The notes: generated by a model not told the origin, from the sequence alone. DNA of 64,000 nucleotides from Salisapilia sapeloensis CBS 127946 (GCA_023334545.1 JAADVB010000035.1:1-64000), one strand, 5' to 3'. Positions 4,601-34,700 are shown, counted from the stretch's first letter. Made by a program: numbers and translations.

Positions 4601-5154
4601 ATGCGTTCTCCAGCATGCAGTGGGTGTCGGACCACTGAAAAGACAGAACTGTTCGGAGCTGCAATTCGATTCTTTCTTTTCTTTTTCTTTCTCTTCAGCA
4701 TCGCCGCTCAGATCGTTTCGCTGCGTCGGTGCCAATTTCTCTTCCAAAAGCAATACACGCTCCATTTCCCTCTTTTTCTCATTTTCCAAGATCTGATACT
4801 CTTTTCGCCTACCCCACGTAGATGAACAATTCGCATGCGATCTTTTGCGTCGAAATTACGCAGCTAGAGACACTCTATCGACGCGATTGGAGTCATGACA
4901 ACTCGACACGGATCAGTGCATAGACTTCGCTTTGGTGCTTGGAATGAGCCATCTGCTCTGCTTCGCATCTCGATCCAAAGCTTCTCCCGTCGACAGGAAA
5001 AGGCGTTATGGCGCTAAAGTCAAAAGATACGTTTCGATAAGATTCATGTTCCTTCAAATGCATCTAGAACGTCGCTGAGAAGCCTCTTCGGAGGAGAACC
5101 CCAAGTCCATCATCCAATGCGCCAAGTTTTTGTGCGTCCGTTTCTAAAAAATGA

Positions 5155-6279
<1,125 letters not shown>

Positions 6280-6368
6280 AGCCAGGCTTCTCGTCTTTAG
6301 GATAAATCCTCTTATTAGCGAATACAAAACACTTAATACCTCCCTTGTAAAATTGTTTATTTGCACAC

Positions 6369-13713: not shown

Positions 13714-16700
13714 ATGCTATTCGGGGCTTTACCCATGCGGAGCATGCTCTCCGTGTTGGGAATAGCTGTAGCATGTTGGACACCCGTTCGAGGTTTAGAT
13801 ACTTCCATATTGCAATTTTCGCCGCAGTTCGTGCCGCATCCACCTCCCAATGTGTCTATCTCTGCATACGATGCCAACTCCATGCGTGTGCAGTTTCTGC
13901 CGCCACGAGATGGTGTTGAGAGTGCAAAACCGGAAGGTGACAACGGTGCTCCTGTGATCGGCTATACGATCGAAGTTGCGCGAGGCATGCACGAAGTGCA
14001 CCAGTTCAGCGTCACTGCGTCAGGCGCACTATCCAGCGGAGAATACAAGCTGGAGTTTACCAATGCCGATGGTACGTCGGAGAGTACGCGGTGCATTCCA
14101 TGGGATGCTAGTGAGACGACGTTTGAAATGGCTCTAGAGGAGCTGTCAATCATTGACACAGTCTCTGTAAGTCGATCGGAGCACTCTGGAGAAACGCTTG
14201 GATATGACTATCTAGTCGAGTTCGATGGAGCAGACTTGGTTCGTGGCGAACAGCCGAATGAGTTGCAAGGTGCGGTGGATAATTGCAAGCCAATTAGCCC
14301 TATAAATCGCCAGCTTACTTTTGCGTCGAGCCGTGTGACGCACGGGACACTCGGTTATACACCTGAAATCTGGATGGTCATGACGGATGAGACTACACGC
14401 ACAAAATTAGTCGGAGGACATTTCGATTTGTCTATTGGCTTTGATGGTGGATGGGAAGATACAACCGTGACTGGTACTGTTGATGCTGGATCAAGCATCG
14501 TCCTGACATCCATTTCCATGGTTGGCAAGGTCAATCGTGGTGATAAGGTGCTTATTGGAAATCAACAATTTACAATACATCCAAGCGCTCTTTTCACGGA
14601 TGAAATGATGCCATTGAGCTCGTACCATACTCTTGGAGCTAAAGACGCCAATATCTTTAAGGTTGAGACAGCTATTGGAGACGTATGGGTTGAGCAAGCT
14701 TCGAGTGAAGTCAAAACGGCCGAGGACTTGACAACGTACTTTGCCGCGGATGAACACATAAAGATTGGAGCGTATGAGTTTGCCATCAGTAGCATTACCA
14801 GCACCAAAATCGATTTGCAAGCGATTGGCAGTGGACCAGACAAATGGCCGGATGCTGACCAGAGACACATTACCGCCTATTGCCGGTTAAAGGTACGAGT
14901 CGATGCCAACGCGGACGCTGTGGAGATGAAACGAGCACTTAGTTGGCTGCCTGGAGTCGGTGCAGTGGATGTAAGTCGCCAAGGACCTACCGCTGTCAAT
15001 GGATATCGCTGGTTCATCACGTTTCAGTCTCTCGGCGCGCTCGTGAACTGCCCCCAGTCACCATGTTTACATGCCGATAAAGTAACCGGTATGGATACTC
15101 TGTTAGTGGATGCAGTTGGGGATGCGTGTGTAGACTGTTTGGTTCAGGATATAGTTTGGCAGGCTGGATCTTCAGTCACCCAATCGCAAGCAAGCAATGC
15201 ACTCTTCCCACCTTCTTCTGTCGTTGCCACATATGAGATTGGAGGCGTCGTGAACGAAGTGCAAGAGCTCTGGACTTCTGCCTCTGCGAACGATCTCTTC
15301 GGCACATTTCAAATAAACTTTCTATCAGCGTTGATGGAAGAAGATGTGACTGTCAATCACGATGAAAGCGCAGAGGACTTGCAAACCAAGTTGGAGCTCA
15401 TCCCTTCCATCGGTCGAGTGAACGTCCTTCGCAGTACAAATGACGTGTTTGGGTTCACATGGACAATCACTTTCCTCACTAACACTGGAGACCTGCCGTT
15501 ATTGACTATCTTGAATGAGAAACTAACTGGCACCGATCCTACTGTGTCCGTACAAGAGCGTGTGAAAGGCGTTGGAGTACCTTTTGAAGCTGTAATTGAT
15601 GATCTATCGCCGGAAGAAAGCTACTATGTACGTGCATTCGCTCGCAACAAAAATGGGTTTAGTCTCGGTAGCGAAAGTCTTCAAGTAGTTGGGCGTGGTG
15701 CACTCCCATTCGCGACAACGGTCGGCTCTGCACCAGATCCACCTACGCTCATTGGAAATTGGCCACTCTCAGAAACGCAGGTCAATGTCATGATGCGTGA
15801 GCCGATGTCGAATGGAGATCCGATCGAAAGGTACATTGTGGAATACGCAATGGGATCATCCTTCGGCACAGCTCCTGTCAAAGAATTCCACATCCATAGC
15901 AATGCACCCTTCGATATCGCTGGCTCTTTCCAACTGCAGTACGGAGACGAAAGCCTACCGATGCTACCTGCAGATGCATCTGCTCAAGTTGTGGCAAACG
16001 CACTAAACGCTGTAAAGAACCTTCGACCCGTCCAAGTCTCTCGCTACATGTACGTGTTGACTGGAGATGTTACTAGTGCTGCAAATTCCTTTTCTGCTGC
16101 TGGTAACATGATCGTTACAACGCCTTTAACGAAACATCAGTGCGAGATGCTGTCTGCTGGTTCGATGATTCTATTCGACGAACATGTTTTCGTCGTGAGT
16201 AGTACACCAAAGGTCGATGATGAGGCTGTACATGTTCAAGCTGATCATGGTCAAGCAGACTCCAATCCTGTCGACTCTCGTTTGTTCAAGTTGGACACAA
16301 CTGGAGCAGAGATCGGACCATTTGGGTATCAATGGCTAGTGACTTTTCCCTATGAGGTTGAAGACTTTGCTGGCGGAAACTATCCAGGTCTACAGCTGCA
16401 TCCTTCGCTTTACTCTGTCGAAAGCCAGGTGCCACTGACAGTCGGTTTGACGGATGTGACACCTGGAGTACCACCAGATTACCACGGACAAGTTGTCGTT
16501 AGCACCGCTAGCGACTGTGATATGTACACCATTGGCGCGCCTTCGAATGTACAAATGCTTCAATTTCATGCATCAAAGGCGCTGGTAGATGGAGGATATA
16601 CACTCCAGCTTGGGTCAGAGACGACTGACTGTATTACATTAGATACAATCAATAATGTCGGTGACTTGCGTGATCGTCTGCTCAATGACTTGACGTACGT

Positions 16701-19700
16701 CAAGCGGGTGGATGTTCATAAAGAACGCAATTTCAAAGTCTTGGTGATCGCAGGTAGCGCTGACTCCCACGTGCATACTTTTGACAAAGATACTTTGAAG
16801 ATCACTATCTCGAGTGGCTTGACAGCTTCAGAGGCAGAGATGCTTCAGAAGGATGCGATTATTCAAGTGAGTCGGAATCCAAACGACTTTACGCGCGAAT
16901 CGTGCGAGCTCCAAGTGACAGCACAACCATCTACTGGAAGCTCGATTGTTAGTGTAGCAAATTTCGGTGCATGCGCTTCATTTTCTGGTGAACGACGTAG
17001 CTTGCGTGTGCTTAATTCATATGACTACAAGATCCACTTCTGGGGATCCTACCCTACCGGTCAATGGCCAACATTAAAGATTGTACAAGACGACTTTGGC
17101 AAAGGGAGCTGCCAAGTATGGACTCCATCTCCCAATTCGGTCTACGCGACAGTCCACACAATTCGATACGAAGGCATTTGTGCCAAAGGACAAGAGGGCA
17201 CCCAGACAATATTGGCGGATGCAAAATCTGCCATCACTGGAAGCTTCCAGTTCAGCTACCTCGGCAAGGAGACACCGCTTTTAAGTTTTTCTACGACAAA
17301 AGCGAAAGCCATGCAAGAGCAGCTTGATGCTATTACTGAGGCTGGCATGACCAGTGTGACGATGAGTGCCTTTGGAACCCATGGCAAAGCGTGGCATATT
17401 ACGTTCAACCAAGCACATGATGTGGTGGATTCTATTTACATTAAGCATTCTTTCTTAGCTGGTGACGATGTCTATATCAGTGTCTATCCTACGGTCTTGA
17501 TCTCTACTACGGCTGCAAAAGACGATATTCGTGGTACTTTTAACATCATACTAAATGGACAGACGACAGAAGCAATCGGTTATTCAGCGACGCATGCAAA
17601 GGTTGTTCAGGAGCTTGAAAAAATGCCAGACATTTACTCTGTCATTGCCTTGGGACAAATGAATGCTGGAGACGTAGCTGTGTACGCGCTGGAACTGATA
17701 GCAGATACGCAAGCAAGCAGTTCCATTATCAAGAATGTGCGGCTGAATGGTGACAAAATCGATCCCACGCTATTCCTTGCTCTCGGGGAAGAAATCGTAG
17801 TTAATGGAGAAGAGCGCACTATTACATCGTTGTCACCGGTAGATATTACTTTGGACAGCGGTATCACTACGACGACAATAGACGCCACTGTATATGCTGG
17901 GCTTACTACAAAAGAGACAAAGTTCTTGCCTGGGTTTGTTGGCATATCGGCGCTCACAAAAGTTGTTTCAGCCACCACAGGAAACGATTGGATTATCATG
18001 TCAGACGATCATGGTCTGGATGGAAGTGTAGGCGAGAAGATATACATTCAAGGTCAAGAACTAACGATTGCCGAAGTGAGCGGTGCAGGTGTGCGTGTGA
18101 CGCCCGTATATGCCGGCTCAGACGTCAATGATGCGACTAACAGTGTGTATGTCTTTGACAATAAGCTTCGCACGACGGAAGATGTGACAGCCTTCATACA
18201 AGACAATGACGAAATTTGGATCCGATATAGCGATGCTGACATTGTCCAGTACACTATTCGACATGCGCACGCTGATCATCTGGAGGTGGATGGGGTATTC
18301 AAAGAAAGTTTAGTTAAAGCTTCAGCGCACTACGCAGCCTACGGTCGAAAGTGGTCTCTTGTCTTCCGGTCGTACATTGGCGATCTAAATACAATCGATG
18401 CTCTTCCAGGCAATGACTTGCGAGGAACAGAGGTAAAAATTGGCATCAAAACGCCCAATGCTGTTCCTGCACGCGTTGCTACACTCGGAAACCCAGAAGT
18501 TCAGCAAACAGTTTTGCTACGTGCTAGTGATCCAGCTAATCTAGATGCGGGAGCTACATTTGCACTAACTTTTGATGGCACAACTACTAGTAGCTTAAGC
18601 TGGGATGCCTCCGATGTGGATGTAGAGCAAGCCTTAAAAACAGTAGGTGCTGATGGAGTTACTGTCCAAGCAAAGTCATTAGCAGACAAGGGTTTCTTCC
18701 GAACGATAAACTTTTGGGGGAATTATGCAGCTCGTACTCTTCCGTTGCTTGAAGTGACAGCGTTCAATCCAGGAACTTCTTTAGTCTCTGCACTTGTACA
18801 TGGAAATGCTGGTGTCTCTCGAACAAAGCATTACAATACGATTCTTAATCAAGACGCAGAGTATGTCGTACGTCTGTTTGCAGCCAACTCATTTGGGCTG
18901 AGTACTAGCCTAGAGACGTATTTATTGAAAACATCCACGACGTCAGTGTTTCCAAGTGCTCCACGAGCAGTTAATTTAGGCGAATACCGTGGACCGGATG
19001 CACTCTCGGTGAACTATTTCTCGCCAGGGTACACGGGTGGAAAAGAGATCACTATGTATCGACTCGAGTGGGACTCGTCTCCGACATTCGACAGCTCTAG
19101 CTCCGATTATGGAGCTGCCACCGTTCAAAAGCAAGCAGAGGTGCAGCTTGTCCAGATAAGTTTCAAAAGCGATGTCGATCGAGACGGTTGGTTTACGCTT
19201 TCTTTCGGAGGACAAACTTCTTCTCTACTGCGTTATGACTGCAGTGCTGAGAAGATGAAGGAAGAGATTGCGATGTTAACAGACACGACGAGTATAGGCG
19301 AAGATCCTGTAAAGATCATTCGAAACAAAGTTTCATGGGGATATACGTGGAAAATTACGTTTTTAAATACGCCAGGAGATCTAGCTCTATTACGTGCTGA
19401 TGCTTCACTTCTCTCAGGAGATAGTCCGAGAGTCTTTGTTACAGAAGTTGCAAAGGGCTCAGCGGATATTAGCGTAGGTGAGTTCACGAACGAAGTGCAA
19501 GAAATCTATACCGATGCAGCGACAGAGATGAGTGGTGACTTTAGACTAGAGTTTAATGGTCGAAGGATGATCGACCCAGTTTCGGTGGATGCATCTGCTC
19601 TAGATATGCAGCTCGCTCTACAAGCGCTAACGGATACGTATGCGATTAAAGTGTCAAAACGAGAGCGCAACGTCGAAATAAAGACTGCGATATGGAGCGT

Positions 19701-22700
19701 GACATTCGCTTATTTGCAGGGTGAAGAGCTAGTCGGGTCTGGTGATGTCTTCATCATACGTGTTGCTACTACGAACCTACAAGACGCAAGTGCTAGTGTC
19801 AATATTGCAGAGAAGGTGTATGGAACAGATCCATTCCGATACTCGATCGAGGGCTTGCGTCCGAACGTGCGCTACTACCTGCACGTGATGGCGTATAACT
19901 CGATGGGCTTTGGATCAGCGAACTCACCCATGTCAACGGCAATGACGTGCTCGCAAGCATCACCTCCAACCTCCATTGCAGTGAACGTTGTGAGTGAGCA
20001 AGCTTTGCAAGTTGCCTGGTCCACTGCGGCAGACGCTAATCTTGGATGTGCGACGACCAAGTACAGTATTGAATGGTATCATCCGAATGCAGTGCAAGAA
20101 GTACAACTTATCACGACATCTGCTACACAAGGCATCCGTGAAGTCCAACGACTTGTCAACTTTGCGAGCACCGAGAGTCTCAATGGCTACTTCCAGCTTT
20201 CTTTCGGTGGCGAAAGGACACAAAATCTTGCTTGGAATGCTCCTGCGGAAGGTCGTGGCTCGGTGAAAGAGCGCTTGGAGCGACTATCAACGATCGGAAC
20301 GGTGCAGGTGACTCGCCAAGTTTCTCGACGTGTCGTTCCGAATCTCTTTGTGACTGTCTCCGGCGATCAAGTATCAGTGGTTGTGGCTTCGTCAAGCTCT
20401 GATTTTAACGACTTAACCTTGCCACTTGATAATACAGTTTGGATCCTCGGTCAACCTTACCAGGTTAATGCAAAGAGTCAGTATGCTCTTACAATCGATC
20501 AGACAGTAACAATTGACGCACCCGTGCCGATCTTTATCAACGCGAATGGATATGAATGGATCATTACTTTCACGTCTGGACATGTCGGACCTCAAGACAT
20601 TATGGAAGCTCATCCAACGGATAACTGGAGCGGTAACAAAGGAGACATCTATTGTGAACGCGTGATAACTGGTATGGAGCCTATGAGCGGCACTTTTACC
20701 GTGTCCTTTGCCCACGATGGTTTTTCCGAGACGACACCGCCTCTTGCGCATGACATTAGTGCAAACAAGATGAAGGATGCTTTAGAACAGTTAATTACGA
20801 TCGGAGAAGTTGATGTAGCACGATCTCCGAATGGCTACGGGTATAACTGGCTTGTGACATTTTTGTCTGAGCTAGGGGATCTTGCGATGTTGGAAGTAGA
20901 TGGGACTGAGCTTCACGGTCCAAACGTTGATGTCCACACTGCGACGATCGAAACTGGTGTTTTACCCACTGGTTACTGTGAGCAGAATGGTTTGTCTGGT
21001 TCCCCAGCTCTTGTAAGTGTTCCTGGGTCAGATATTTATACAATCTCAGCCTTAACGAAAGGAGCAGAGTATGTCATTCGAGTCCGAGGGTACAATGAGG
21101 AAGGATATGGCTACGCAGGTTATTCGACACCTGCAATTCAAGTGCCGCGTACAAAGCCTACTCCACCAACGAGTATCGAGCTCATGGCGTTATCACAAAG
21201 TATGGTGAAAGTAATTTGGAGTCCTCCGCTAGATGATGGGGGTGCAGTCATATCTTCATACATCCTCGAATGGGATACTCTGAGTACCTTTGCCAATGCA
21301 GCTTCACCGAACTATGACTATCGTGGTATACTTAATGTCAGCCCAGATGATGAAACGCCTTATTACTATAATATTCCAGTCATAGCAACCAACGCTCACT
21401 ACATTCGTATATATGCAGTGAATGATCAAGGGACAAGTGATGCTGGCATGTCAGCCCAATTAAGTATAGTACCTGCAAATCAAGTCCCAGGTCGTCCAGA
21501 AAATGTAGTGGCAGAAGCACTGTCCAACTCTGTGATACTTGTAGAATGGTCACCACCTTCGATTGAAAAGAACTTTTACAGTGGAGATGGCGGTCTACCG
21601 ATTACACAGTACATGATTGAATGGGATACCGTGGACACATTTGATAACTCGATCAAGACAGCAACTGTAAATGCTCCTGCTACTTTGTATGAAATTGGAG
21701 GTGACGATCCGATCACTGGTGTTCGGTCATCTGAGCTTATTGAAGGCACGGAATACTACATTCGCGTGACTGCGTTCAATGCAGAAGGTTCTGGTGCGTC
21801 ACAAGTGTCCGATCCAGAGTATGTTAAGGCGGAAAAGAAAGCGCCGACGCCTCCTGAAGAATTAACACTCACGGTCTTGCCTCCTGATGACGTTCGAGCC
21901 GAATGGAACTTTCCTGCATATGATGGTGGCAATACGCTCATGAGCTACGAGATTGAATGGGATGACCAAGATGACTTTATTAGTGGCCAAATGAGCTCCG
22001 CGAACGTCCCTATCGTTCGCGAAGTTCAATCAGTGGCTATCAGCAGTGACGTAGTAAACGAAGAGCAGTTCATAGACGCGACAGTGGAAGTTATTAACGA
22101 ACAGCAAACTATCCGCACGAAGTTTGACGGCAAAGATGAGATACAGATCGTTCATACTATCAACAATCCAGTGGTAGATGAAGTGCAGTATGTACGAACG
22201 AAAGCTACGGATCGGAATGAAGTCCAAGAGCTTAGACTAACAGCTCCAGATAAGAATGAGATCCAGGCTATACGGACATCCTTACCAACGGATGTGCTTG
22301 AGATACAGACCGTCAAACTTGTCACAAAGAGAGTCCCAGAAGTACAAACTTGGTCAATATCAATTGCGACAGCAGATCCAAACGATATCACTGGATCCCT
22401 GAGACTTAATTTTGACAACACTGCTTGTACGCACTGTCAAGGCATGCGCACAAGCTCCTGGACGGACGATGTTATTGGTGCTTTACAAGTGACTGACCCT
22501 GCGGATGGATTGCCTATAATGCAAAATGGGATAGACTCTTTATCGAATGTAGATACTGGCAGCATTGTTGTGACAAACGATCGACAGGACATGAATGACG
22601 GCACGTTCCTCTTCAGCTTTACATTTACCTTTTCGGGAGACGATGTGATAGGTGACGTAGCGTCACTTACCGTCGACCAAAATGTATTCGTCAATTCAAA

Positions 22701-25700
22701 TAAAGTGACGAATGTGGATCCAACGGCGACACCAGGTCCTGAAGGGAGTGAGTTTTCGGACAATGCAGCGTCCGTGTTCGATCTTACATACACGTGTGAG
22801 ACGTATTCGGATCCAAATGCGATTCTGCTTGTGAGTAGTCATTGCGACCCACGATCTGTTGGTAGCTCCATTTGTGATTCGTGTGTGACGGACTTTGACG
22901 GTACGCAAATTACACTGAACCAAGCAGTGACGGTGGATGCCGATACATGGCTTGTTGCTGGTGTTTGTACTTTTGTTGTCAAAGACGCTGTTACTGGTGG
23001 AACGACGATCACCATTGTCGGCAATGGTAAAGATGTCGGGCAGCACTGTAGTCCGTTAGACTTTGATGGTGTCTTACTTGACCTCTATGAAGCTCGCCAG
23101 CATAAGACGTCTATCCCGACCAAGAGTAGTGCCTATGAGCTTACATCAGCCGAGCAATTATACAGTCTACTCTCTCCGAATGTCCAATCCGTCCAAGTGT
23201 CCGAAGAGAGCTTTATAGACGCAAATTATGCTGGTAAGACATATAAAATCGCGTTCCTTCGACCAGGAACCATTCCGCTGTTGGAATGCGACGTCTCGAA
23301 CGTCGTTCTGACATCAGGTAATAGCGCAGACACGCGCTGTGAGGTTGTTCGTGATACACCTGGTAGTATGATCAAAGGCAGGTTCCAAGTCGGACTCGAG
23401 GCCGAGTCTCTTCGAAATACTGGCAACATCAAAATGTCGGACTATCTACCATGGGATGCGACCGAGAGTATGATGAAAGCAGCATTGGAGGCAGTAGAGT
23501 TTACAAACAGTAACGGTGCTACGGAAAGTGTTTTTGGTACTGTTCAAGTAAAGCGATCGACGTACTTTGTCGGTAATACGAAATGGTCGGGTGGATTCAC
23601 GTGGCAGATCACCTTTTTATCACGTGGCATGAACATACCGGCTATGACTGTCGTTAACGAGCTACTAGATGTCGCAACACAAGGTGTTGCTTTAGAGGTA
23701 GAAGACGCTGATGACACGCTTTTGAGTCCTACTGGAGGAGCACAAAATGGTAATGAAATTGAAGGCGGGATTAAGTTCCAGTACAATGGCAACACAGAGG
23801 AATGCTTCGTTGGTGCAACTCACATTCCGCCGGCCGAACTACAAATCGACGACTTGGTAGACGGAGACTTGGCTACTTGCCTCGGCCCATTATTCCCTGG
23901 TGGCGAAAATGATATTGTGGTGACTCGGTCGTCTGTTACTCAAGCAGGAGGGTTCACGTGGAGCATTACGTTCGTTGGCCAAGATGTGGGAGGAGACGTT
24001 GACGAAATCGAAATTGTGTCTTCATCCTTGGTACCCTCAAGCACAGAGCGAAGAATTGTTGAAAGCATTCCAGGAAACCAGCTCGGTGGTACCTTCTTAC
24101 TATCTTTCAATGGCGAAACGACGGGGCCGATCTCTGCTACTGCAAGTGCTAATGAGATTATGTCCCAACTAAATGGACTAAGGACAATCTATCCATCTCG
24201 TGTCGAAGTTTCAGAAGGCGCTACGCAAGAAACAGCCAGCTCACAAGTACAAGCAAAGGAGTGGTTGATCACATTTAAATCTTCGACTTGGGTTGATCCG
24301 GAAGCAGATCATTCCACTCTAGTTGAAGGCAACTGGGTCGGATCACCAGCCCGATGGGATGATGTTTGGCCAACAACTGGATACTCGAAAGCTTGGGGTC
24401 GTCAAGTTGGTCCGCTCTGGGCGAAAAACATTCGACTTGCATGTATCAAAGGAGGACTGACAACAACTGCTGATGATAATACGGAGGATTGTCAAACAGG
24501 CGAAGAGATACCTGGACAAGGTCCGATCAATGGAAACTTCAAATTAATCTTGGATTCGCAAGCTGGCAACTTACCTGCAGGCCATGCCATGTCAAAGCAG
24601 ATGACTGTCACGAGTGGTCTTATCGCACATAATGCACGAGCTACTCGTATTGATAGTGGTGGTGATGGAACGAGTATGCAGGAGATCTTAGAGGAAATGG
24701 AAAATGTCGGAACGGTCGATGTCAGTCGAAGCAGCGTTGATGTAGATTCTGGAACATACTACTGGACAATCACGTTCTTGCGTGATGCTTATGGTCCTTG
24801 TGAGCAGGAGGAGGAAAGTGGATCAGGTGAGAGGTTGTGCAATTCCCCAGGAGATATTCCGAGGCTAGCATTCGATGCCGATGCAACCCTGATGGCCGAC
24901 GGCATCGTTTGTGACGAAGATGGTGCATCAGACGGCTCGAATACTTGCGATGGTCTTACCACTCAGCACGGTGCTGTTCTGCGTGGTGACTTCACCCAGC
25001 TTCAAGTAACTGGTGATCCAGGCGTATCGACTCGATACACATTGACACCGGACTGTGCTAATATCAATTGTCCTGATCCCATCACTGAAATGAGTATCAA
25101 TTCGGGAGAAGAGCAGATTTCAACGCATTTAAAACCAGGCGATCGATTCACGCTAGGCACCTCTATATGTATCTTTACCGTTGAATCAGTGACTACAGCC
25201 CCTGTCAAGGTGGTAGTAGATTCCTTGACTTGTGGTGACTTAGATACAAATAGTGCTCGTGGATTGCATATGCTTTTGCCTTGGAATGCGAAAGAGAGCC
25301 TAGTCAAACGTGTCCTTGAAGCCTCTGCTGATGTCAGCAAAGAAGTTGACGAGTGGATTGGCGGACGTAAAGTTTTAGTCGAACGAACGATCCAGGGCAA
25401 GTATGGTGAGGTTTCGTGGAGTATTCGGTTTATATCCAACCCTGGTTACACACCTCCTGGCGCTGGTGATCTCAATGACTTGGACCCGGTTTTCGAACCG
25501 TCTCCCATCTCTATATCATATCAAGTTACTGTAACTCCAAATCAGCATGGAAGTGATGAGCTTAGTGGATTCTATACCATTGACTACTACACTAACAAGC
25601 CACGTGATGTCTCATTTGATGAACCAGAGGACAGGCTGATGCGTAAAATCAATGAGTTCTCTACGATCGGGAGAGTGAGCGTAAAACGGTACCGATACCC

Positions 25701-28700
25701 TTCTGTGGATACAGGCTGTGAAGATAGCGACTGCTCGGCAGGATGGGACGACTTGCCTGTATTGCAAAATCGCCCTCGTGGAGGTTACCGATGGCAAATA
25801 CGCTTCATGCAGTCTACTGGAGAATACGAAGGCTATACTTTCCCACCTGGGAGTGGGGATGCTAGTCCTCTGACCGTCACGAAAGGATCGCTTGCAGGTG
25901 CATCTGCTTCCGTTGACTTGGTAAACAACCAAGATGGTTCGCCTCCCGTCCGGGGTGTCTTTCAGTTAGGTCGTGATAGTAGTATCACGCCGGAGCTAGG
26001 ATACGCCTCGTCTTACAAGAGCGTGAAGGAAGCTATTGAAGACATGGATCTATACGGTGAGGTGGATGTCGTTCGATCTTACTTGCTAACTCAGAAACTA
26101 CGAAGTGTGTCTGCAAGTGTGACGAAAGATGGATCCACTGCTGTGGTGACGACTGATACAGATATCCGGCAGCACATTATGCCGGGTGACGTCATTCGAT
26201 TTGGTGTCGAAAGCTCCAATAACCTCATCGGAACAAATGGGGACACGCCACTAGTGTCTGACTTGTCAATGTCTTACGGTACTGTGAGCATGGGATCACC
26301 AATTGTAACAGCTGAGGAAGAGGTTCTTAACGAGTTATATCCTGATATGCATGTACGCATTGATGGGCTAGTGTATACGATTCAACAGTCTGGAAGAGAA
26401 GTACAGGCGCTGTTCGTGAGTACGACAGTAACTGAGTGGGATAGTGATGTTTTAGCGACTTCAGCCTTCCAGCTTCAATTCATCGGGCGAGGAACCTCGC
26501 AGACAACTAATTGTTTACAGTTTGATGCTTTACCAAGTGATGTCGAAACGGAGCTTAACGCAGTAAATCAAAATATGCTGCTGCCTGGTATGTTTGCTGC
26601 TGACGATATCAAGGTGACACGGTCTGGACCGCACATTAGTGCTGATAACTTGCGAAAAAGCTATACCTACTATATCTACTTCCAAGGAAGCTCGGTTGCT
26701 GGTGATGTTACTACTTTAGACGTCGCGAGTTGTGCCGCTTCCGATACATCAGCGGATGCATCATTCGAAACGGAAACGATGAGGCATGGAGGAAAAGTTG
26801 CACATCAACGGTTGTCGTTGGCTACTGACTCAGGATACATAGACGACCCAAATGGTTATTACAAGTTGAGCATAGGTGCCGCCAAGACAAATTGTCTACT
26901 TTGGGGTGGTCCAGCTTCCACCATAGAGACAGAGTTGGCCACGCTTGACGTCACGAAAGCCGTGGTGTCGACTTCCGGTACGGGAGTATCTGTGACCGCC
27001 ATCCAGCGTCTACGACTGACCTCAAATACCCCAGTAACCACTCCTCAGAATGGTTTATTCAAACTAGGGCTGAAACTTGATGGTGAAACTACTTTGACGC
27101 CTTGCTTGGACTACGGTCTATCTGCTGACAGTTTAGAAAATCACTTGAACACTTTGATTGGAAAGGAAAACGTAGACCATCACATTCGGGTTACTCGAAG
27201 TGGAGATGGAACAGCAAGCTCTGGATACGGGTTTGAATACCTTATACACTTTGAAGGTCCCGTCTCGGGTGGACTCAGTACAATTCTTGGTAGTATTAAA
27301 GAGCTGCAGGTTTATGATCTTGGTAAAGGTGCTTGTGATCCTGCAGCTGGTGGCGATCCTGCGATCAATGTCGAGACAATTCGTGAAGGAAAAGCTGGAT
27401 ATACGTACGATATTTACTTCCTAGAATACTCGGCTGCGGCAGTACCGAAGCTCGAGATCATTACAGATGAAGCAGAGTGTCCATCAAGCGGCTGGACACA
27501 AGTGGGAGGCAACGTTCGTATGCCAAAAATTGAACAGCTAGAGCTAGGTGGAAGTAGTGAAGTACAAACGTTGACATTGCAGGATAGCAGAGACGCGGCT
27601 AAGCCGAGTTATCGGCTTAGTTTTGATGGTGTCGAGACAGGTGGACCTTGCTTATTGCTTGGGGATTTGCCATCTACTCTCCAACAAGAATTAGCTACGA
27701 TACCAGTAATCGGAACGGACGGCGTCTACGTTTCGAGAGATATCCTGACTTCGGCCTCGAATGGATATGTGTACTCTGTCACGTTTGTCGGTAAACAAGT
27801 GACAGGAAAAGTACCGCTACTCAGCGTTATTGAGTATGATGACGCTTGCAGTGGACAAACAGATATAGCGACATTTGACACTGCTGTAGAGCGTACAGTT
27901 TCAGGCGGATCCTCTCCTGGATCCTTTGCTCTTACCACTTTATACGACGGTGAGTCTCCTGGTGAGCACATTGTGTACCATATTGGGCAATTATTCAGTG
28001 TCCAGGAAGAACAGATTGAGAAGTATAAAATCATCATTCACAACGGCGGACCGACACTAATTGACACGAATGCTGGTACCTATCGGCTTGAAGTTGACTC
28101 TCATGTAACTACGTCCATTATGTGGAATGCACTTGAAAGTGAAGTCGAGGAGAAAATTGTAACAGCAATAAGTGCAGACAAAGGTGATGTTGTTGTGACA
28201 AGAAAATTAGACTCTGCTGCAGCTCCGAACGGCTACGTGTACAATGTGTACTTCAGTGCAAGAAAATGGAGTAGTATTGATCTTGCCTTTTTAGACGATA
28301 CCTCGTTTAACGATGGAACAGTCACTGTATCTGAGATTACACCGGGTGGATCAGAAGAAGCTGAGCCTCTTCTTCGTCAATCCATTCCACTCGCAGATCT
28401 AGCTACGCCTACAACCAGTGCTCGATACCTTGCCAACTCGGCTGCTAATGTGAACGTCTACAAGGTGAATGGATTCTTCTGGACAGTCAAGTTTAAGTCT
28501 GCTATCGGAAACATTCCGGCGCTAGAAAAAACCACATCAAATCTCTTGGGTGGCGATCTAACGGTTATTGACGACTTTATACGCGGAAGTGAGTCGGATT
28601 CATTTACTATTCAAAATCTCATTCCCGGTATCCCGTACTATGTCCGCGTTGCAGCGTCGAGTGCAACTGGTAAGGGAGCTTTCACACCTGTCAAGGTTGT

Positions 28701-31700
28701 GACACCAAGTGGCGTTCCATCAGCTGTACGCAACTTCCAGTCTGGGCATGCCTTGTATGTTCAGGAAGTACAGGAAGTACGTACGGCAGCAACCTATGTT
28801 TCGGAAGTGCAAACGATCACTACAAGTGCCGCTGAAGTGTCTGAAGTACAAACGATGCTGACAAGTGCTCCGTCAAGTGCGTGTCTGGATAATTCATGCA
28901 TTCATGGCAGCGTTGCTTTCCGTGCACCGATGATCCAAACCATCACTATATCTGGTGAGGCAAACATTAATGACGGTGGTCAAATCAGATTACTTTTCGA
29001 AAGGTATGAGACGGATGAAGCTAACCTCGCAGGAGGTAACGAGGGAAAGCTCATCCCGATTACTGCTGCGGAGACAACTGGTCTACTAGCATGGCCTTTG
29101 GAGGCAAGTTTGATCCAGCAGGAGTTAGAGGGCTTAAGCTCTCTAAGCGTAGGAGATATCATAGTTAAGCAAGAAGATGAAGGAAGTGCTTCTGGCTATG
29201 GAGCAACGTTCAGCGTCTCATTCATCGGAACTCTGGTTGGAGGTCAAACGAATCTTATTCAAGTGCTCCATGAAGCGGATGGATCATGTCCTGAATGTGC
29301 CAAGCTAGAAACGTCTGAAGGTGATTCATGCGACATAAGTGTTTCGATGAACCAAGACCAGGCGATGGGAACGGACACGGCCGTCCAAAAGGTCGTTGTA
29401 AAGGCTGAAAAACGACTTGCAGCAGGTTCTTATAAGTTAGAATTCGATCATCTTGGAGCAATAAGAAGTTCCGAGTGCATTCAATTCGATGCTCCACCTC
29501 GAGGAGAGAATTCACAGACTGTGGAGAATATACTAGAGAGAATGTTGAATATCGATAGCGTCTACGTCACACGCACGGTGGACCAGACGGAAGCTCCGAA
29601 TGGCTTTATCTACTACATTTTCTTTGACGGAAATGCAGTGCACGGTAGCGTGAATAAGATGACAGTCGCATACGACACATGTACCAAGTTCCAAACGGTC
29701 GAGAACAATGTACTTACAGAAATAACTGGCAGTGCTGAGGTCTTTACGATCGCAAAGAAGTTTACGGATATATCGACCAGTACTGCTGAGGATCTAAAAG
29801 AGGATCTGGATCAGCTTCCTGTCTTTGGAAGAGTTGTTACATCCCAGTCGCTCAAGGATGCACAAGGTGGGCTCTTATGGACTGTTGCTTTTGAAGAAGG
29901 ACAAGGCAATCTCCCACAATTCATATGTGTCACTGGAGATGACTTTGAACCAGCAGGGTTTGGCTCATGTATAACATCTACCATTACGGACGGTAATGCT
30001 CTCGATGGCACGTTTGTGATTGAATCTTCCCAACCGATCCCGTATAATGCTGAAGCAGCATTTATAAAGCAAGCGATGGAAGAGATGTCGTGGGTTGGAG
30101 AGGTAGAAGTGACAAGGTCGAGCCCAACACCGCAGTATGGATACTCTTGGACGATTACTTATGTAGATTACCTTGGTGATGTGCCTACGCTATCGATTGC
30201 AAGCTCTCTTACTGGCGCCGGTAGCCAAATTGAAGTCAGAGAAGACCGTAAAGGTAATCGCATCGGTGGATCCTTTACACTGTCGTACATGGGGATCGAA
30301 ACGAGTGCCATTGCCTGCACGGCAAAGGCTATGGCAGTGGATACCGGAAACGATGGTACGTCCATGCAAGAGAAACTGGAGGCTCTGAAGAATGTTGGTC
30401 CAGTACATGTCGTACGATCCATGCAGGACAAGCAGGGAGGCTATTCGTGGTTAATTACCTTCCTCGACGATAAGCAAAATGTCGGTGATATTGCACTTTT
30501 AAAAAGCAACGGTATGAGTTTAACAGGTGCAGGTGTCGTAGCATTTACACGAGAAATTAGAAAAGGAGCAAAGGCTGCAGGAAACCAGTTGTGGGTTTCT
30601 TTCGATCCACCAGCTACTGATCGTGGCATGTCCATCGCCAAGTATAGAGTACGTTGGGATACGAATGCTGGTTTCCAAGCAGATCCTAAGCAAGCTGAAA
30701 TAACCAACAGCGAGCTCTTATATCGATACCAGCACATTGTGACTAAGGCTCCGAGCATTTCATGGTCTGCGCAGCATCAACAACCTGTTCCGGCTACGCA
30801 GCACATTATATTCAATACTGGAACCAGTGGAACTGCCTTCAGTGTGACGTTCCGTGGCCAGACGACGGTTGGATCGATGGTAGTGGATTCATCACCAGCA
30901 GCCGCATCCACGACTGACGATCTGCTTCAAAAGCTTGAGAATCTACATGCGATCGGACCTGGTGCATTGACGATTCTACCTACTTCTTCACCAATAAGTC
31001 CCGGCATGAGTGTCGAAGTTACCTTCCATGGTGTTCCGGGAGACGTCCCGCCCCTATCTTTCTCCAACAGTGTCGCTACCATACAAGAGAGTACAAGTAT
31101 TACAGGATACACACCGTTCCGCAAAGAGCAAGTTGTGCTTGACTGCAAAGGAACGACAACTACTGTTACGTTTACGACTGGTAGCCAAAGTACGGATATT
31201 GCTGAGGGGGTTTCACTATCACAGGCAGAAGCGAAGCTCGAGGAAATATTCGGAGTGGAAGCTGGAAGCATCCGAGTGATTAGTACGGACGGCCATGAAT
31301 ATTTCTGTAGCGACGCAGCCGACACGGCTACTATCGTCTTTGATAGAGTCTATGGTGAACAGGAATTGGTTGTGGCGAATCTGGATAAAGTTACGGAAGC
31401 ATGCATCAAAGGATATAAGTACGACACGTCAATTGCAAAGATGAGCGGTACGTTCCAATTAGGCTACAAGGGAGTGTTTACGCCGATGCTGAATGCCGAA
31501 TCGTCTGCTGATGCTATCCGTTATGCACTTGAAAACCTCCCTGCTATCTCGACGATTGAAGCGACAAGAGATCGCTCTTCCCAACCAATTGTCAATCAGG
31601 GTACTGTGGATGCTGTTCAAGGTCAAGTGTACGTGACTTGCTCTGATGCTTCATGTGATTTTGCCTCGGGTGCGTATGGTCTTCCTGGTGATGTCATTCT

Positions 31701-34700
31701 AATCGATGGAACGTGGTATACCATTCGAACGGATACAGTGTCTCCTGCCTTACCATCGGATCGACTTTTCTTGGGTGACTTGAATGGCCGTGAGATTGGA
31801 TACCAAGGTCCAAGCACAAATGGACTCACTGTGTACGAATGGGCAAAAGGATATGTATGGACGGTTGGGCTACTCCTTGTGGACGAGTTAGAATACATCC
31901 AAACACGCGTTCCTCACTTCAATCCGCTTGACGCACACGTTAGTGTTACCGGAAGTTCTTGTGATAAATGCCACTACGTCCCAGGTCAATCGTCCAGTAC
32001 ACTCGTTCGGGGACAGAGCTATTACCTCGATGCGAATGCTTTTAACTCCAATGGGTACGGTGATGATATTGTACCTATTCAAGCGACCCCACGTCAGGTG
32101 CCGAACGCTCCATCCAATGTGAATATTGTCGTCATCTCTGGTGTTGAGATTGAGGTCTTTTTTTCCCCACCGTATCTTTCTGACTCGGACATTTCAGCCT
32201 ACATTGTGCAGTGGGATACGAATCCTGACTTTAAGCACGGACTACCAATCTGTGAAGCATGTGCCGTCGGGTTGAATGGAAATCAGCTCACGGTCACTGA
32301 GTCGTCTATTGAAAACTTACCATTAACCGATGTCAAGTTCACGATTGCAGATGAAAACTGTCAGATGATGCTCAAGTCTGTTGTCGGCACAAAGTTCACG
32401 GTGGAAGCAGGGCATGGCTGTAGTGAGTTTGAGGATGGCAACTACCCGATGTACTATTACACGTATGAGCCTACTTACATTACGAACTTTGATAAGCAAG
32501 CTTCAGTCTACAGACACTTGCTCAAGGTTCCTACTCCTCTAACAAAGTACTTTGTTCGCGTGGCAGCTGAGAACTCTGTCGCAGTTCAAAAGGTTGCGTA
32601 CGATGGAAATCCACCGAATAATCGCCAGTGGAGTACGACGCTGTCTGCTATTACAGCTGACACTGTCCCTGATAAACCACTAAGCGTTGATCTATTGCAG
32701 TTTTCAGGCTCAGCGCTTGAGCTACAAATCTTACCGCCAGTTCGAGATGGTAAAGGAGAAGAAGGGAATGCGATTGAAAAGTATTGGATCTTGTATGACA
32801 CTTCTCCGACGTATGATACGGAAGGTATAGCTCCGACGGAAGTCAATGCAAACTCGCTCGAGTACTTGTCAGATGGAAGACGGATATACCACTTGACGGG
32901 CCTCGAGACGGGTGTCGTGTACTATGTTCAAGTCAAGCTACGCAATTCAGTCGGTCTTAGCACGGCAATGGCTGCGCAATCGGCTATTGCACCGGAAGAA
33001 ACACCTTCTGAAACTAGTCTGGTTCGACTATCAAGTCCTAGGAGCTCATCTACGCCGATCACCACTGCGACAGTAACATGGCAGCCACCGACTCTAAACG
33101 GCGGACGCGATGTTGATAGCTACGTGGTGGAATGGTGGACGAAGAAGACGAGACAGGAAGTTCAGATTATTGAAATTACATGGGACCAAGCACCAGCTGC
33201 TGAGAAGTTCCAATTGAAGTTTAAAAAAGGCACGACTGAGATGTTTCCTCTGCATATTACTGCAGAAAACGTTCGCAATTCACTTATGAATGTGATGGTG
33301 GACGGAAACCCAGTGATCAAGCATGTCTCGGTTACTCGCAGAGATATTAACGCGGGTACTGGTCGACAATGGATCGTGACGTTTACGGATGAAGTGAATA
33401 ACGCCGGTGATCAACCGATGATACAGATCGCTTTCGACAGTACCTACAACTACCTCAATGGTCGAGTGTTTGAATCGATATCAGGCATCCAAGTACCTTT
33501 GAGTAACTTCCCTGGTACACCGGAGGTGCAAGTGCTAACGATCTACCATCCTACGGAAACGGTGACAGGGTTCTTCCGTCTAAGCTTTGGTGGCTCAGGC
33601 TGGTCCAACCACTTGTCTGCAGAGAAAGTAACTACTGTGGAGCTTGAGGCAGCTCTTGAAGCACTCCCGACGATCGGTCAAGTAACCGCGAATGAAGAGA
33701 CTGGACAAGCGTTTGAACGCATTTGGACGATCACATTCAACTCCAATGTCGGCAATCTACCTGCTATCGTTGTGGATGACACGGAGATCTTACCAGACAC
33801 TAATGCTTTCGTCGGTGTTAAAGACGGAGATAACGCAGTGACAAGTACTGGAGTGCTCTGTCTGCCGAATCCAACTGGGTGTGGAGGATCTTGGCCGGAT
33901 GGTGTGACTGATATCGCTGATAAAGCAAGAATCGGGGAGGTAGCAAGTGGGTATGGTATCTTTGAAACGCAAAGTGCAGATACCTTATCGTACACAATCT
34001 CTGGATTGACGCCAGGCGTACTGTACTATGCTTCTGTCGCTGCCAAGAACTACCGTGGCTTAGGTCCACGTGCGGCATCAATGCCAGAAAGTATCATGCC
34101 ACGACTACAAGTACCTAACGCACCTACGAATGTCTTGGTGGATGTCAAGTACGGGTCTGCGACGCAGCTTACCGTTTCATACGATGCACCGACTAGCGAC
34201 GGTGGTGCTCCTGTGTGGATGTACCACATAGAGTACGACCAGTCATTTAAGTTCGACAGTGGTGGAGAGCAAGTTCACTGGTGTCCCACAGCACCTGTGA
34301 ATGCTGTGTGGACAGTCCAGACGACTACATCTACTTCTTCAGAGCCCATTGGACGAGGCTTCTTTAAGCTGGAGCTCACACGAAAGGGAATCACCGAAAC
34401 GACGCATCCGATTCCATGGGATGCTGTCTCCATGGCAGATGAAGAAGAAGGTAACTCGGATGTCGTCCATTCGAAAGTTTTCTGTACGCCATGCTCCGAT
34501 TGTAGTGACAAGTGCGAGTCGGATGAAGCGACTGGTGATGGACGAGTCGAGAATTCTGGGTCGATGCAGTCGAAACTAGAACACTTGGGCATGATTTCAG
34601 ATGTGAAAATCAAGCGGACGCCAAATAGCGGAAACGATGGCGGATATACGTGGTCTGTCACGTTCTTAGATATTGGCGATGATTTCAATCTAAACGTAGC

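What the first reader, a model, noticed from the sequence alone, without database searches (positions are those of the whole stretch)
20098..30560. Nested strand-complementation architecture: runs of orphan EVQ strands matched by later strand-less module bodies
The ~100-aa module normally starts with an E-V/I-Q strand, then GxFxLxF...ASA..M..ALE.L..IG.V.V.R....GY.W.VTF...GD...L. In three places the first strands occur alone in tandem: two at 20098/20140 (14 aa apart), nine from 22021 to 22339 (aa 2770-2876, mean 13.25 aa) and three at 28765/28804/28843 (exactly 13 aa). Each run is followed by bodies that begin directly at the G.FxL motif with no EVQ strand (MIKGRFQV, NEIEGGIKF, NQLGGTFLL, PINGNFKL, ELSGFYTI, PVRGVFQL; GNALDGTF, GNRIGGSF; EPMSGTF). 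The counts are 2 vs 2, 3 vs 3 and 9 vs about 8. Thirteen extended residues span roughly 4 nm, about one beta-sandwich. Inference: the chain runs out as a thin strand and folds back, each returning body capturing one outbound strand. The result would be a self-clamped, length-defined and probably force-resistant rod, like donor-strand complementation in bacterial pili but within one polypeptide. I know of no description of this for the family; it is the best candidate for an undescribed system here.
Basis: partly seen in the sequence, partly recalled or inferred. Interest (0 to 1): 0.92.

Follow-up and report, generated by a model that had tools for sequence, protein, structure and literature searches.

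The report
Nine-deep nested protein domains
A giant secreted oomycete protein builds side-branches by inserting copies of one ~100-residue domain inside each other up to nine deep. This leaves runs of lone first strands that are most likely completed, in reverse order, by domain bodies encoded hundreds to about 1,400 residues downstream.

Summary
Window 13714-36003 (+) is one intact 7,429-aa ORF in an oomycete-like genome. The E-V/I-Q strand motif occurs 20 times against 2.4 expected. It forms tandem runs of 2, 9 and 3 at exactly the stated coordinates, and these runs are conserved from oomycetes to diatoms.

It is better described as recursive (matryoshka) domain insertion: s1..s9 B9..B1.

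The evidence:
- Nine body-HMM hits follow the nine strands.
- Across 550 FN3-bounded inserts in 190 homologues, the number of lone strands tracks the number of strand-less bodies.
- An AlphaFold model holding all nine strands but only bodies B9-B5 ordered s5-s9 (pLDDT ~90) and left s1-s4 disordered (s1-s3 and the start of s4 below 50, s4 without a strand). I had written this prediction down beforehand.
- Strand-body couplings learnt on ordinary modules favour reverse-order pairing (5e-6 of permutations as good).
- The host FN3 domains are themselves split.

The module is absent from Pfam. It is homologous to the "CTE-like" domains of mycobacteriophage Bxb1 gp23 (PDB 9D93), whose sequence also looks nested.

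No atomic coordinates could be inspected. Force resistance and biological function remain untested.

The parts
13714..36003 (+). Giant ORF, 7,429 aa. It has a signal-peptide-like N-terminus. About 15 FN3 domains form a backbone, and 9 of them are interrupted by arrays of the EVQ module (~37 modules).
   Evidence: orthologues of ~7,400 aa in oomycetes and 4,300-5,700 aa in diatoms
19945..20088 (+). N-terminal half (strands A-C') of FN3 no. 4 (aa 2078-2125), the host of the 2-deep nest
   Evidence: permuted FN3 HMM hit 2043-2125; strands with pLDDT ~90 in the AF2 model
20098..20136 (+). Lone first strand of the 2-deep nest (aa 2129-2141); predicted partner is the body at aa 2311-2413
   Evidence: model residues 55-61 are a strand with pLDDT ~93 when that body is present
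20140..20643 (+). Inner complete module: strand at aa 2143 plus body at aa 2156-2310. It carries a further small beta-rich insert between beta2 and beta3.
   Evidence: HMM hit 2142-2234 starting at profile position 2; AF2
20644..20952 (+). Strand-less body (aa 2311-2413, '..EPMSGTF..') that closes the 2-deep nest
   Evidence: HMM hit starts at profile position 13; short linker conserved in orthologues
21037..21147 (+). C-terminal half (strands E-G) of FN3 no. 4 (aa 2442-2478)
21841..21978 (+). N-terminal half of FN3 no. 7 (aa 2710-2755), the host of the 9-deep nest
22021..22389 (+). Run of nine first strands s1-s9 (aa 2770, 2783, 2796, 2809, 2823, 2836, 2849, 2863, 2876), period 13-14 aa. s9 is contiguous with its own body B9.
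   Evidence: the AF2 truncation orders s5-s9 only
22390..24528 (+). Returning bodies B9 (aa 2893-3017), B8 (3018-3220, with a Cys-rich insert), B7 (3221-3349), B6 (3350-3457) and B5 (3458-3605)
   Evidence: HMM hits; junctions; present in the AF2 model with pLDDT mostly 80-95
24529..26397 (+). Returning bodies B4 (aa 3606-3754), B3 (3755-3950, with an insert), B2 (3951-4079) and B1 (4080-4228, with an insert). Predicted partners are s4, s3, s2 and s1.
   Evidence: HMM hits; pairing matrix
26398..28611 (+). Further modules with their own first strand (aa 4229-4966), still inside the FN3 no. 7 loop. They include a second kind of nest at aa 4364-4592, where a whole module sits between the helix and beta2 of its host.
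   Evidence: split HMM hits 4380-4418 (positions 1-42), 4446-4524 and 4558-4584 (positions 50-75)
28612..28749 (+). C-terminal half of FN3 no. 7 (aa 4967-5000), followed by the A strand of FN3 no. 8 (aa 5000-5012)
28759..28926 (+). Run of three first strands (aa 5018, 5031, 5044). The third is followed by a short beta1-like stub (aa 5064-5070).
   Evidence: same layout in diatom orthologues
28927..29733 (+). Two complete inner modules (aa 5072-5191 and 5221-5340) at the core of the 3-deep nest
   Evidence: HMM hits starting at profile positions 3 and 2
29734..30564 (+). Three closing bodies: aa 5341-5425 (the remainder of the third strand's module), 5426-5514 ('GNALDGTF') and 5515-5617 ('GNRIGGSF')
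30571..30675 (+). Strands B-C' of FN3 no. 8 (aa 5620-5654). The 3-deep nest therefore sits in this FN3's A-B loop. Its C-terminal half lies at aa 6095-6130 (nt 31996-32103), after another module insert.

Best explanation
The runs of lone EVQ strands and the later strand-less bodies are the two halves of discontinuous domains made by recursive domain insertion.

The module (~100 aa) is: beta0 'EVQxIxT', loop, beta1 'GxFxLxF', helix, beta2 'VxVxR', beta3 'WxITF', 'GDxPxL', then a last strand 'VxVExxxG'. Its two ends lie close together, so a whole module can sit in a loop of another. Here a guest module sits in the beta0-beta1 loop of its host, and the guest is itself a host, up to nine levels deep. 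Read along the chain this gives s1 s2 ... s9 B9 ... B2 B1. Each beta0 pairs antiparallel with beta3 of its own body, 15 to about 1,400 residues downstream.

Each nest in turn sits in a loop of an FN3 domain: the C'-E loop in most cases, the A-B loop for the 3-deep nest. The protein is therefore a backbone of ~15 FN3 domains carrying branches of 1 to 9 or more modules. Neighbouring modules within a branch are joined by two chain crossings, one outbound strand linker and one returning body linker.

Shown by computation: the grammar, the co-variation of counts, the AF2 order/disorder step, the pairing preference, and homology to a solved phage domain.

Inferred: that the branches are stiff and of defined length; that folding proceeds from the innermost module outwards; and that the branches serve surface adhesion or glycan binding, as suggested for the phage homologues.
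For: 1. Grammar in this protein.
- Nine strands are followed by exactly nine body-HMM hits before the next module that has its own strand.
- The 2-deep nest reads FN3-N, s, s, B, B, FN3-C.
- The 3-deep nest reads s s s [two complete modules] B B B.

2. Counts co-vary across homologues.
- Paralogues have balanced nests of depth 2 and 4, for example four strands, four bodies and then the FN3 C-half. An automated parse of a metagenomic relative closes a 13-strand run.
- In 550 FN3-bounded inserts from 190 proteins, lone strands against strand-less bodies fall near the diagonal: 0 gives 0 (217 inserts) or 1 (101); 1 gives 1 (64); 3 gives 3 (14); 4 gives 4 (3); 6-8 give 5-11; 10-11 give 11-13.
- Exact closure occurs in 57% of runs at the true run length, against 30% and 38% for length minus or plus one.

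3. AF2 truncation test. The construct was aa 2762-3602: all nine strands but only bodies B9-B5, with 41 sequences in the alignment.
- Residues 1-53 (s1-s3 and the start of s4) have pLDDT below 50 and no secondary structure, although this is the best-conserved part of the alignment.
- s5-s9 are strands at pLDDT ~90, and pTM is 0.65.
- I wrote this prediction down beforehand.
- The whole 2-deep nest with its split FN3 gives pLDDT 89.5 and pTM 0.65.

4. Pairing scores.
- In 1,955 ordinary modules, beta0 covaries with beta3 in an antiparallel register.
- Scores trained only on these prefer the predicted distant partner over other bodies of the same protein: -1.25 against -2.20 bits; Wilcoxon p = 4e-7 over 113 proteins, 4e-4 over 74 non-redundant ones.
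- In the 9x9 matrix over 36 orthologues, reverse-order pairing sums to -9.0 and same-order pairing to -26.5. Only 5e-6 of permutations do as well.

5. Strand-less bodies keep the key residues (R58, W69, G18) at least as well as ordinary bodies.

6. Precedent. The module profile hits Bxb1 gp23 (PDB 9D93) at E = 1.9e-29. Three [EVQ-beta1-helix] halves lie in tandem, with matches to C-terminal parts of the module downstream; two of those matches are weak.
Against: - No coordinates or contact maps were available. Strand-to-body contacts are deduced from pLDDT, DSSP, counts and covariation.
- AF2 could be biased. There is only one truncation construct.
- The automated grammar is noisy: 43% of runs do not close exactly and the per-insert Spearman correlation is only 0.60. 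The main cause is degenerate strands and first strands of bodies that the tokeniser misses. For example, the EEQ strand at aa 2783 is missed in all orthologues.
- In the 9x9 matrix, s2 and s8 do not score best with their predicted bodies.
- Orthologues do not vary in depth, so co-variation rests on paralogues and distant homologues.
- Function and mechanics are not tested at all.
Confidence: 0.85

Rival explanations
1. The EVQ run folds on its own, as a beta-solenoid, beta-roll or single-layer beta-meander spacer with a 13-residue period. On this reading the strand-less bodies are simply a variant of the module that does without beta0.
For: The strict 13-14 aa period and the conserved D/N-E-V/I-Q-x-V/I-x-T pattern resemble the ladders of solenoid repeats. 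Edge strands are often dispensable.
Against: - In the AF2 truncation, s1-s4 are disordered (s1-s3 and the start of s4 below pLDDT 50, s4 without a strand) while s5-s9 are ordered. A self-contained repeat fold would treat all nine alike.
- The number of lone strands tracks the number of strand-less bodies across homologues.
- Pairing scores are specific for the reverse order.
Confidence: 0.04
2. The complementation is intermolecular. Lone strands of one molecule fill strand-less bodies of another, as in true donor-strand exchange or domain swapping, giving dimers or polymers.
For: Equal counts of strands and bodies fit this reading just as well. The protein is secreted and giant, so a matrix or fibre role is conceivable.
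Against: - AF2 orders the strands within a single chain with high confidence and pTM 0.65.
- Each nest is bracketed by the two halves of one FN3 domain, which both come out confident in a single-chain model. This is what intramolecular closure predicts.
- Nesting at other loops, and in a phage protein, points to ordinary domain insertion.
Confidence: 0.05
3. The lone strands are decayed remnants of modules or flexible linkers without a defined partner, and the count match is a coincidence.
For: Repeat proteins often carry degenerate fragments. The automated grammar is imperfect.
Against: - The run is better conserved than the region around it and almost indel-free, with most E and Q residues invariant or nearly so from oomycetes to diatoms.
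- Balance recurs at depths 2, 3, 4 and 9, and an automated parse closes a 13-strand run.
- The permutation test gives 5e-6.
Confidence: 0.03
4. The pairing is real but runs in the same order (s1 with the first body after the run, and so on) or is shifted by one. That would be a parallel zipper rather than a nest.
For: Counts alone cannot tell the order.
Against: - With bodies B9-B5 present, it is s5-s9 that become ordered, not s1-s5.
- Same-order pairing scores -26.5 against -9.0 for reverse order.
- Pairs shifted by one neighbour score like mismatches, at -2.06.
- s9 is contiguous with the first body at the canonical spacing.
Confidence: 0.02

Closest known systems
CTE-like domains of mycobacteriophage Bxb1: gp23 'tail tip cage'/distal tail protein (PDB 9D93 chain M) and the C-terminal extension of the major capsid protein (9D9W)
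   Same: - Same module family. The profile of 19 modules hits gp23 at E = 1.9e-29, with the EVQ strand, the GxFxLxF strand and the helix aligned three times, and hits the capsid protein at E = 2e-3.
- Foldseek gives probability 1.0.
- The gp23 sequence also looks nested: three N-terminal module halves in tandem, with matches to C-terminal parts downstream, two of them weak.
- PMC13252515 calls them 'three additional CTE-like domains' of the Bxb1 distal tail protein.
- Many phage tail proteins in BFVD match at probability 1.0.
   Different: - In gp23 the guest sits after the helix, not between beta0 and beta1. The depth is 3, not 9.
- gp23 is a phage virion protein, not a eukaryotic secreted giant, and no FN3 host is involved.
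- The global TM-score is low (0.24).
- I could not read the primary Bxb1 paper (not held) or the coordinates.
Out-and-back nested domains of bacterial flagellin and FliD (D0-D1-D2-D3)
   Same: The chain goes out through the first segments of successive domains and returns through their second segments. This gives a projecting branch whose tip is the innermost domain. Flagellin and FliD structures are among the few weak Foldseek hits.
   Different: The folds are unrelated. Each level is a different domain, not copies of one module. The depth is only 3-4. The similarity scores are weak (TM 0.08-0.17).
Donor-strand complementation in chaperone-usher pili
   Same: A body that lacks one beta strand is completed by a strand encoded elsewhere.
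   Different: - In pili it is intermolecular: it polymerises subunits, needs a chaperone and usher, and the missing strand is the C-terminal G strand of an Ig-like fold.
- Here the strand is the module's own N-terminal strand, supplied within one chain, in an alpha/beta module, in a eukaryote.
FN3-repeat giant proteins (annotated 'titin' or 'fibronectin type III domain' in Phytophthora genomes)
   Same: The orthologues carry those labels, and FN3 is the only Pfam family found.
   Different: About 70% of the protein is the unlisted module, and most FN3 domains are split by it. The 'titin' label says nothing about this architecture.

Membership tests
Bxb1 CTE-like module family (solved in PDB 9D93 and 9D9W) | Significant sequence-profile similarity to the solved domain | tested here: met
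   hmmsearch of the profile of A3 against PDB: gp23 at E = 1.9e-29 with three stretches; major capsid protein at E = 0.0024
Bxb1 CTE-like module family (solved in PDB 9D93 and 9D9W) | Same order of motifs: EVQ strand, GxFxLxF strand, helix, VxV(T/R) strand, aromatic-x-ITF strand | tested here: met
   Residue-level alignments; family consensus
Bxb1 CTE-like module family (solved in PDB 9D93 and 9D9W) | Similar three-dimensional fold | tested here: inconclusive
   Foldseek gives probability 1.0 and E = 1e-7, but TM is 0.24 because the query has several domains. No single-module model was made.
Bxb1 CTE-like module family (solved in PDB 9D93 and 9D9W) | Binding of cell-surface glycans (reported for Bxb1 baseplate accessory proteins in general) | not testable with these tools
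   Mentioned only second-hand, and only for the accessory proteins in general, in PMC13252515
Nested domain insertion (discontinuous domains) | Segments of a host domain flank one or more complete guest domains in the sequence | tested here: met
   FN3 halves flank the module arrays. Module halves flank whole modules at aa 4380-4592. Strand runs and strand-less bodies are in bracket order.
Nested domain insertion (discontinuous domains) | The separated host segments come together in one fold | tested here: inconclusive
   Indirect only. Both FN3 halves and the lone strand are confident strands in the single-chain model. Strands are ordered only if their predicted body is in the construct. Covariation favours the predicted partners. 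No coordinates were seen.
Nested domain insertion (discontinuous domains) | Numbers of opening and closing segments balance and change together among relatives | tested here: met
Donor-strand complementation (chaperone-usher pili) | The complementing strand comes from another subunit | tested here: inconclusive
   Single-chain AF2 models order the strands, and each nest is closed by one FN3 domain. No multimer model or experiment was done.
Donor-strand complementation (chaperone-usher pili) | Ig-like pilin fold lacking its C-terminal G strand | tested here: not met
   The module has a helix (DSSP), and the separated strand is the N-terminal one
Self-folding short-period beta repeat (solenoid, roll or meander) | The repeat run is ordered without other domains | tested here: not met
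   s1-s3 and the start of s4 have pLDDT below 50 and s4 forms no strand, in the same model in which s5-s9 are ordered
Fibronectin type III (PF00041) | Match above the Pfam gathering score | tested here: met
   108 and 161 bits against a cut-off of 25; 17 permuted units mapped
Adhesin stalk domains cross-linked by internal ester or isopeptide bonds | Thr-Gln or Lys-Asn/Asp bond with a catalytic acid | not tested
   Considered only because E, Q and T are so conserved in the strand. No structural or chemical evidence was obtained.

The most novel reading that the evidence does not exclude
A single ~100-residue module, absent from Pfam yet present in at least 12,800 protein clusters, follows a recursive 'domain inside its own first loop' grammar. 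It reaches nine levels here; in a metagenomic relative an automated parse finds a 13-strand run. As far as I could find, that would be the deepest self-nesting of a protein domain described.

It implies inside-out folding: a polar first strand would have to stay unpaired while up to about 1,400 further residues are made. It would also be a general way to build stiff, doubly connected branches of set length on an FN3 backbone.
Probability: 0.6. Interest if true: 0.85.

Novelty: new variant of a known kind. Interest (0 to 1): 0.8.

Why it matters
Domain insertion is known, but usually one or two levels deep and between different domains. Here one module is inserted into itself again and again, following a grammar that can be read from sequence alone.

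- **Annotation.** Tools that expect contiguous domains will call these regions 'unknown' or see half-domains. The module family is large and has no Pfam entry.
- **Folding.** Strand and body are up to about 1,400 residues apart, which is an extreme test case for co-translational folding and contact order.
- **Design.** Doubly connected nested modules are a ready-made way to build rods of defined length.
- **Biology.** The protein is conserved from oomycetes to diatoms, so it is likely a basic surface or extracellular structure of stramenopiles. Its function is unknown.

Tried and rejected
- **First idea, rejected.** I first thought the 'strand-less' bodies had a degenerate strand of their own at the same spacing. 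Orthologue junctions showed that this segment is the last strand of the preceding module, so the bodies really lack beta0.
- **Family libraries.** Pfam and PHROGs scans of single modules gave nothing usable.
- **Foldseek.** Searches with both multi-domain models gave only low TM-scores, so the module fold could not be classified beyond the phage homologue.
- **Naive counting.** A table of run length against the number of following bodies was too noisy, because inner complete modules interrupt the count. It was replaced by a stack parse and by per-insert counts.
- **Depth variation among orthologues.** There is none. The third run's fourth EVQ in diatoms is the inner module's own strand.
- **Literature.** The primary Bxb1 paper is not held. 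Searches for nested insertion, for mastigoneme proteins and for PITG_01932 gave nothing relevant.
- **OCM6.** The weak PDB hit to an Ochromonas mastigoneme protein (E = 0.7) is not significant.
- **Cross-link idea.** An ester or isopeptide cross-link was considered because E, Q and T are so conserved. It was not pursued for lack of any test.

Full report
**Context.** The finding lies in one uninterrupted ORF, window 13714-36003 on the + strand, 7,429 aa, with a signal-peptide-like start. The neighbouring genes are eukaryotic: protein kinase with HEAT repeats, ankyrin-FYVE, a UCH/DUSP deubiquitinase, a CEP104-type TOG protein, cofilin and a histone deacetylase. The best relatives are ~7,400-aa proteins of Pythium, Globisporangium, Phytophthora, Plasmopara, Aphanomyces and Saprolegnia at 39-49% identity, and 4,300-5,700-aa proteins of diatoms at about 33%. 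The window therefore comes from an oomycete-like stramenopile. Pfam recognises only FN3.

**The observation.** E[VI]Q occurs 20 times against 2.4 expected. A self-built HMM finds about 37-42 copies of a core module beginning at GxFxLxF. The 9-run is better conserved than the region around it, is almost free of indels, and keeps most of its E and Q residues invariant or nearly so out to diatoms.

I first suspected that the 'strand-less' bodies had a degenerate strand of their own. Orthologue junctions show otherwise. These bodies follow directly on the preceding module's last strand (VxVExxKG) through a short conserved G-[NS]-x-[LI]-x-G-x-F linker, and the ~22-residue EVQ segment is truly absent. 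Family-wide, HMM matches begin either at the EVQ strand or at profile positions 11-15.

**The FN3 domains are split.** An FN3 profile built from this protein shows about 15 FN3 domains. Nine are interrupted in the C'-E loop by module arrays.
- FN3 no. 4: halves at aa 2078-2125 and 2442-2478.
- FN3 no. 7: halves at aa 2710-2755 and 4967-5000.
- FN3 no. 8: interrupted twice, in the A-B loop as well as the C'-E loop.

Anything inserted in a loop must bring its two ends back together. A straight tandem array of modules would not do so. A nested one would.

**The grammar.** Write s for a first strand and B for a body.
- The FN3 no. 4 insert reads s s B B.
- The FN3 no. 7 insert reads nine s, then exactly nine body hits (B9 at aa 2893 through B1 at aa 4080). 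Modules that have their own strand follow from aa 4229.
- The third nest reads s s s, two complete modules, then three closing bodies. The third strand keeps a short beta1 stub next to it.
- A second insertion site also occurs. At aa 4364-4592 a whole module sits between the helix and beta2 of its host.

This is what recursive domain insertion predicts: s1 ... sn Bn ... B1.

**Do the counts change together?** Orthologues do not vary in depth, so I used paralogues and a profile search of 1.84 billion representative proteins. That search found 12,826 proteins with the module, 1,093 of them at E of 1e-30 or better. They include a planctomycete genome bin and marine eukaryote transcripts.
- Paralogues show balanced nests of depth 2 and 4, for example four strands, four bodies and then the FN3 C-half.
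- After automatic tokenising with a strand PSSM (about 4% false discovery) and a family HMM, lone strands and strand-less bodies correlate per protein at r = 0.83.
- Within 550 FN3-bounded inserts the table lies close to the diagonal from 0 up to 11.
- A stack parse closes exactly for 57% of 279 runs at the true run length, against 30% and 38% if the run is taken one shorter or one longer. One relative has a 13-strand run that this parse closes exactly.
- The noise comes mainly from degenerate strands that the PSSM misses, such as the EEQ strand at aa 2783.

**Structure prediction.** The whole 2-deep nest with its split FN3 (aa 2076-2482, 33 sequences) gave mean pLDDT 89.5 and pTM 0.65. The lone strand at aa 2129 came out as a confident strand, with pLDDT about 93.

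The tool returns no coordinates, so I designed a test that can be read from per-residue confidence alone. The construct, aa 2762-3602, contains all nine strands but only bodies B9-B5. Nested reverse-order pairing predicts s5-s9 ordered and s1-s4 not. A self-folding run predicts all nine alike. Same-order pairing predicts s1-s5 ordered. I wrote the prediction down first.

Result:
- Mean pLDDT is 83.6 and pTM is 0.65.
- Residues 1-53 (s1-s3 and the start of s4) have pLDDT below 50 and no secondary structure. This is despite that stretch being the most conserved part of the alignment.
- The next block averages 61, and s4 forms no strand.
- Strands then appear at model residues 62-70, 76-82, 88-95, 102-111 and 115-124, which are s5 to s9, at pLDDT about 90.

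The step lies exactly where the nest model puts it.

**Covariation.**
- In 1,955 ordinary modules the strand covaries with beta3 in an antiparallel register. Strand positions E+3, E+6 and E-1 couple with profile columns 70, 69 and 74, and E itself couples with the D/N of the GDxP loop.
- Scores trained only on these ordinary modules prefer the predicted distant partner over other strand-less bodies of the same protein. The means are -1.25 against -2.20 bits, with p = 4e-7 over 113 proteins and 4e-4 over 74 non-redundant ones. Pairs shifted by one neighbour score -2.06.
- For the 9-deep nest, averaged over 36 orthologues, the reverse-order assignment sums to -9.0 and the same-order assignment to -26.5. 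Only 5e-6 of random assignments do as well. Five of the nine pairs in the optimal assignment lie on the diagonal; s2 and s8 do not score best with their predicted bodies.
- Strand-less bodies conserve the key residues at least as well as ordinary ones.

**What is known.** The module has no Pfam or PHROGs model. Its profile hits mycobacteriophage Bxb1 gp23, the 'tail tip cage' (PDB 9D93), at E = 1.9e-29, and the C-terminal extension of the Bxb1 capsid protein at E = 2e-3. In gp23, three [EVQ-beta1-helix] halves lie in tandem (269-324, 330-386, 390-462), and weaker matches to C-terminal module parts follow at 515-553 and 555-594. A solved structure of this family therefore appears to be nested too, at the other loop and three deep.

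[quoted passage not shown] The primary paper was not available. Foldseek returns gp23, flagellins and FliD, and in BFVD many phage tail proteins, all at low TM-scores. Literature searches found no description of deep self-nesting and nothing on the oomycete protein beyond its length.

**Mechanism.** Shown by computation: the chain leaves an FN3 loop, lays down one first strand per level, reaches the innermost complete module, and returns body by body, each body taking the strand laid down for it.

Inferred:
- Neighbouring modules are joined twice, so the branch should be stiff and its length set by its depth.
- Folding should run from the inside out.
- The strongly polar EVQ strand may help the lone strands stay soluble while they wait.

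Because each nest hangs in a loop, it is a side-branch rather than a load-bearing link between the protein's ends. A surface-adhesion or glycan-binding role is a guess from the phage relatives.

**Verdict.** The core interpretation is supported and recast as recursive domain insertion. It is a new variant of a known kind. Confidence in the architecture is about 0.85. The main gap is that no coordinates or experiments were available.

Noticed in passing
window 13714-36003 (whole ORF): The FN3 domains form a backbone of about 15 units. Nine are split, mostly in the C'-E loop, by inserts of 100 to 2,200 residues. Only six are intact: aa ~2480-2585, 2590-2700, 6320-6425 and three near the C-terminus.
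   Followed up: yes
window 26803-27489 (aa 4364-4592): A second kind of nest. One module's strand, beta1 and helix (aa 4364-4429) are separated from its beta2-beta4 (aa 4545-4592) by a complete module. Bxb1 gp23 appears to use the same loop.
   Followed up: partly
window 20326-20568 (aa 2205-2285); similar inserts near aa 250-370, 800-870, 4130-4220 and 5975-6040: A small beta-rich domain with a 'GDxVxIxGxxYxI' signature is inserted between beta2 and beta3 of several modules. In the AF2 model it hangs on a very long two-stranded ribbon (strands of 27 and 31 residues). Its identity is unknown.
   Followed up: no
window 22801-23088 (aa 3030-3125): A cysteine-rich insert of about 100 residues lies inside body B8, between its first strand and the rest. 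It is conserved in orthologues, including the invariant cysteines seen in alignment A4.
   Followed up: no
window 32236-32541 (aa 6175-6276): FN3 no. 9 carries a different insert of about 100 residues with several cysteines. It is not the EVQ module.
   Followed up: no
module family as a whole (profile of alignment A3): The module matches 12,826 representative proteins (E up to 0.001) in phages, bacteria (including a planctomycete genome bin) and stramenopiles. No Pfam-A or PHROGs model matched it in these scans.
   Followed up: partly
EVQ strand against the body, family-wide: The E of EVQ covaries with the D/N of the 'GDxP' loop (profile column 80). Q is 97% conserved. What these residues do (a metal site, a hydrogen-bond network or a cross-link) is unexplained.
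   Followed up: partly
window 38429-39928 (- strand): A 499-aa lysine- and glutamate-rich ORF with low-complexity acidic repeats. It accounts for the strong AT and GC skew of the 38-40 kb bin. It has no Pfam hit.
   Followed up: partly
window 9450-13253 (-) and 55678-57645 (+): The kinase domains in these long ORFs start in the middle of the Pfam model (profile positions 64 and 73). The genes probably continue in upstream exons, and the list of long ORFs is not a gene model.
   Followed up: no
PDB 9UFE chain FA (OCM6): The module profile gives a weak, non-significant match (E = 0.7) to a protein named OCM6, probably an Ochromonas mastigoneme component. Given the stramenopile-wide conservation of the giant protein, a link to flagellar hairs may be worth a proper test.
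   Followed up: no
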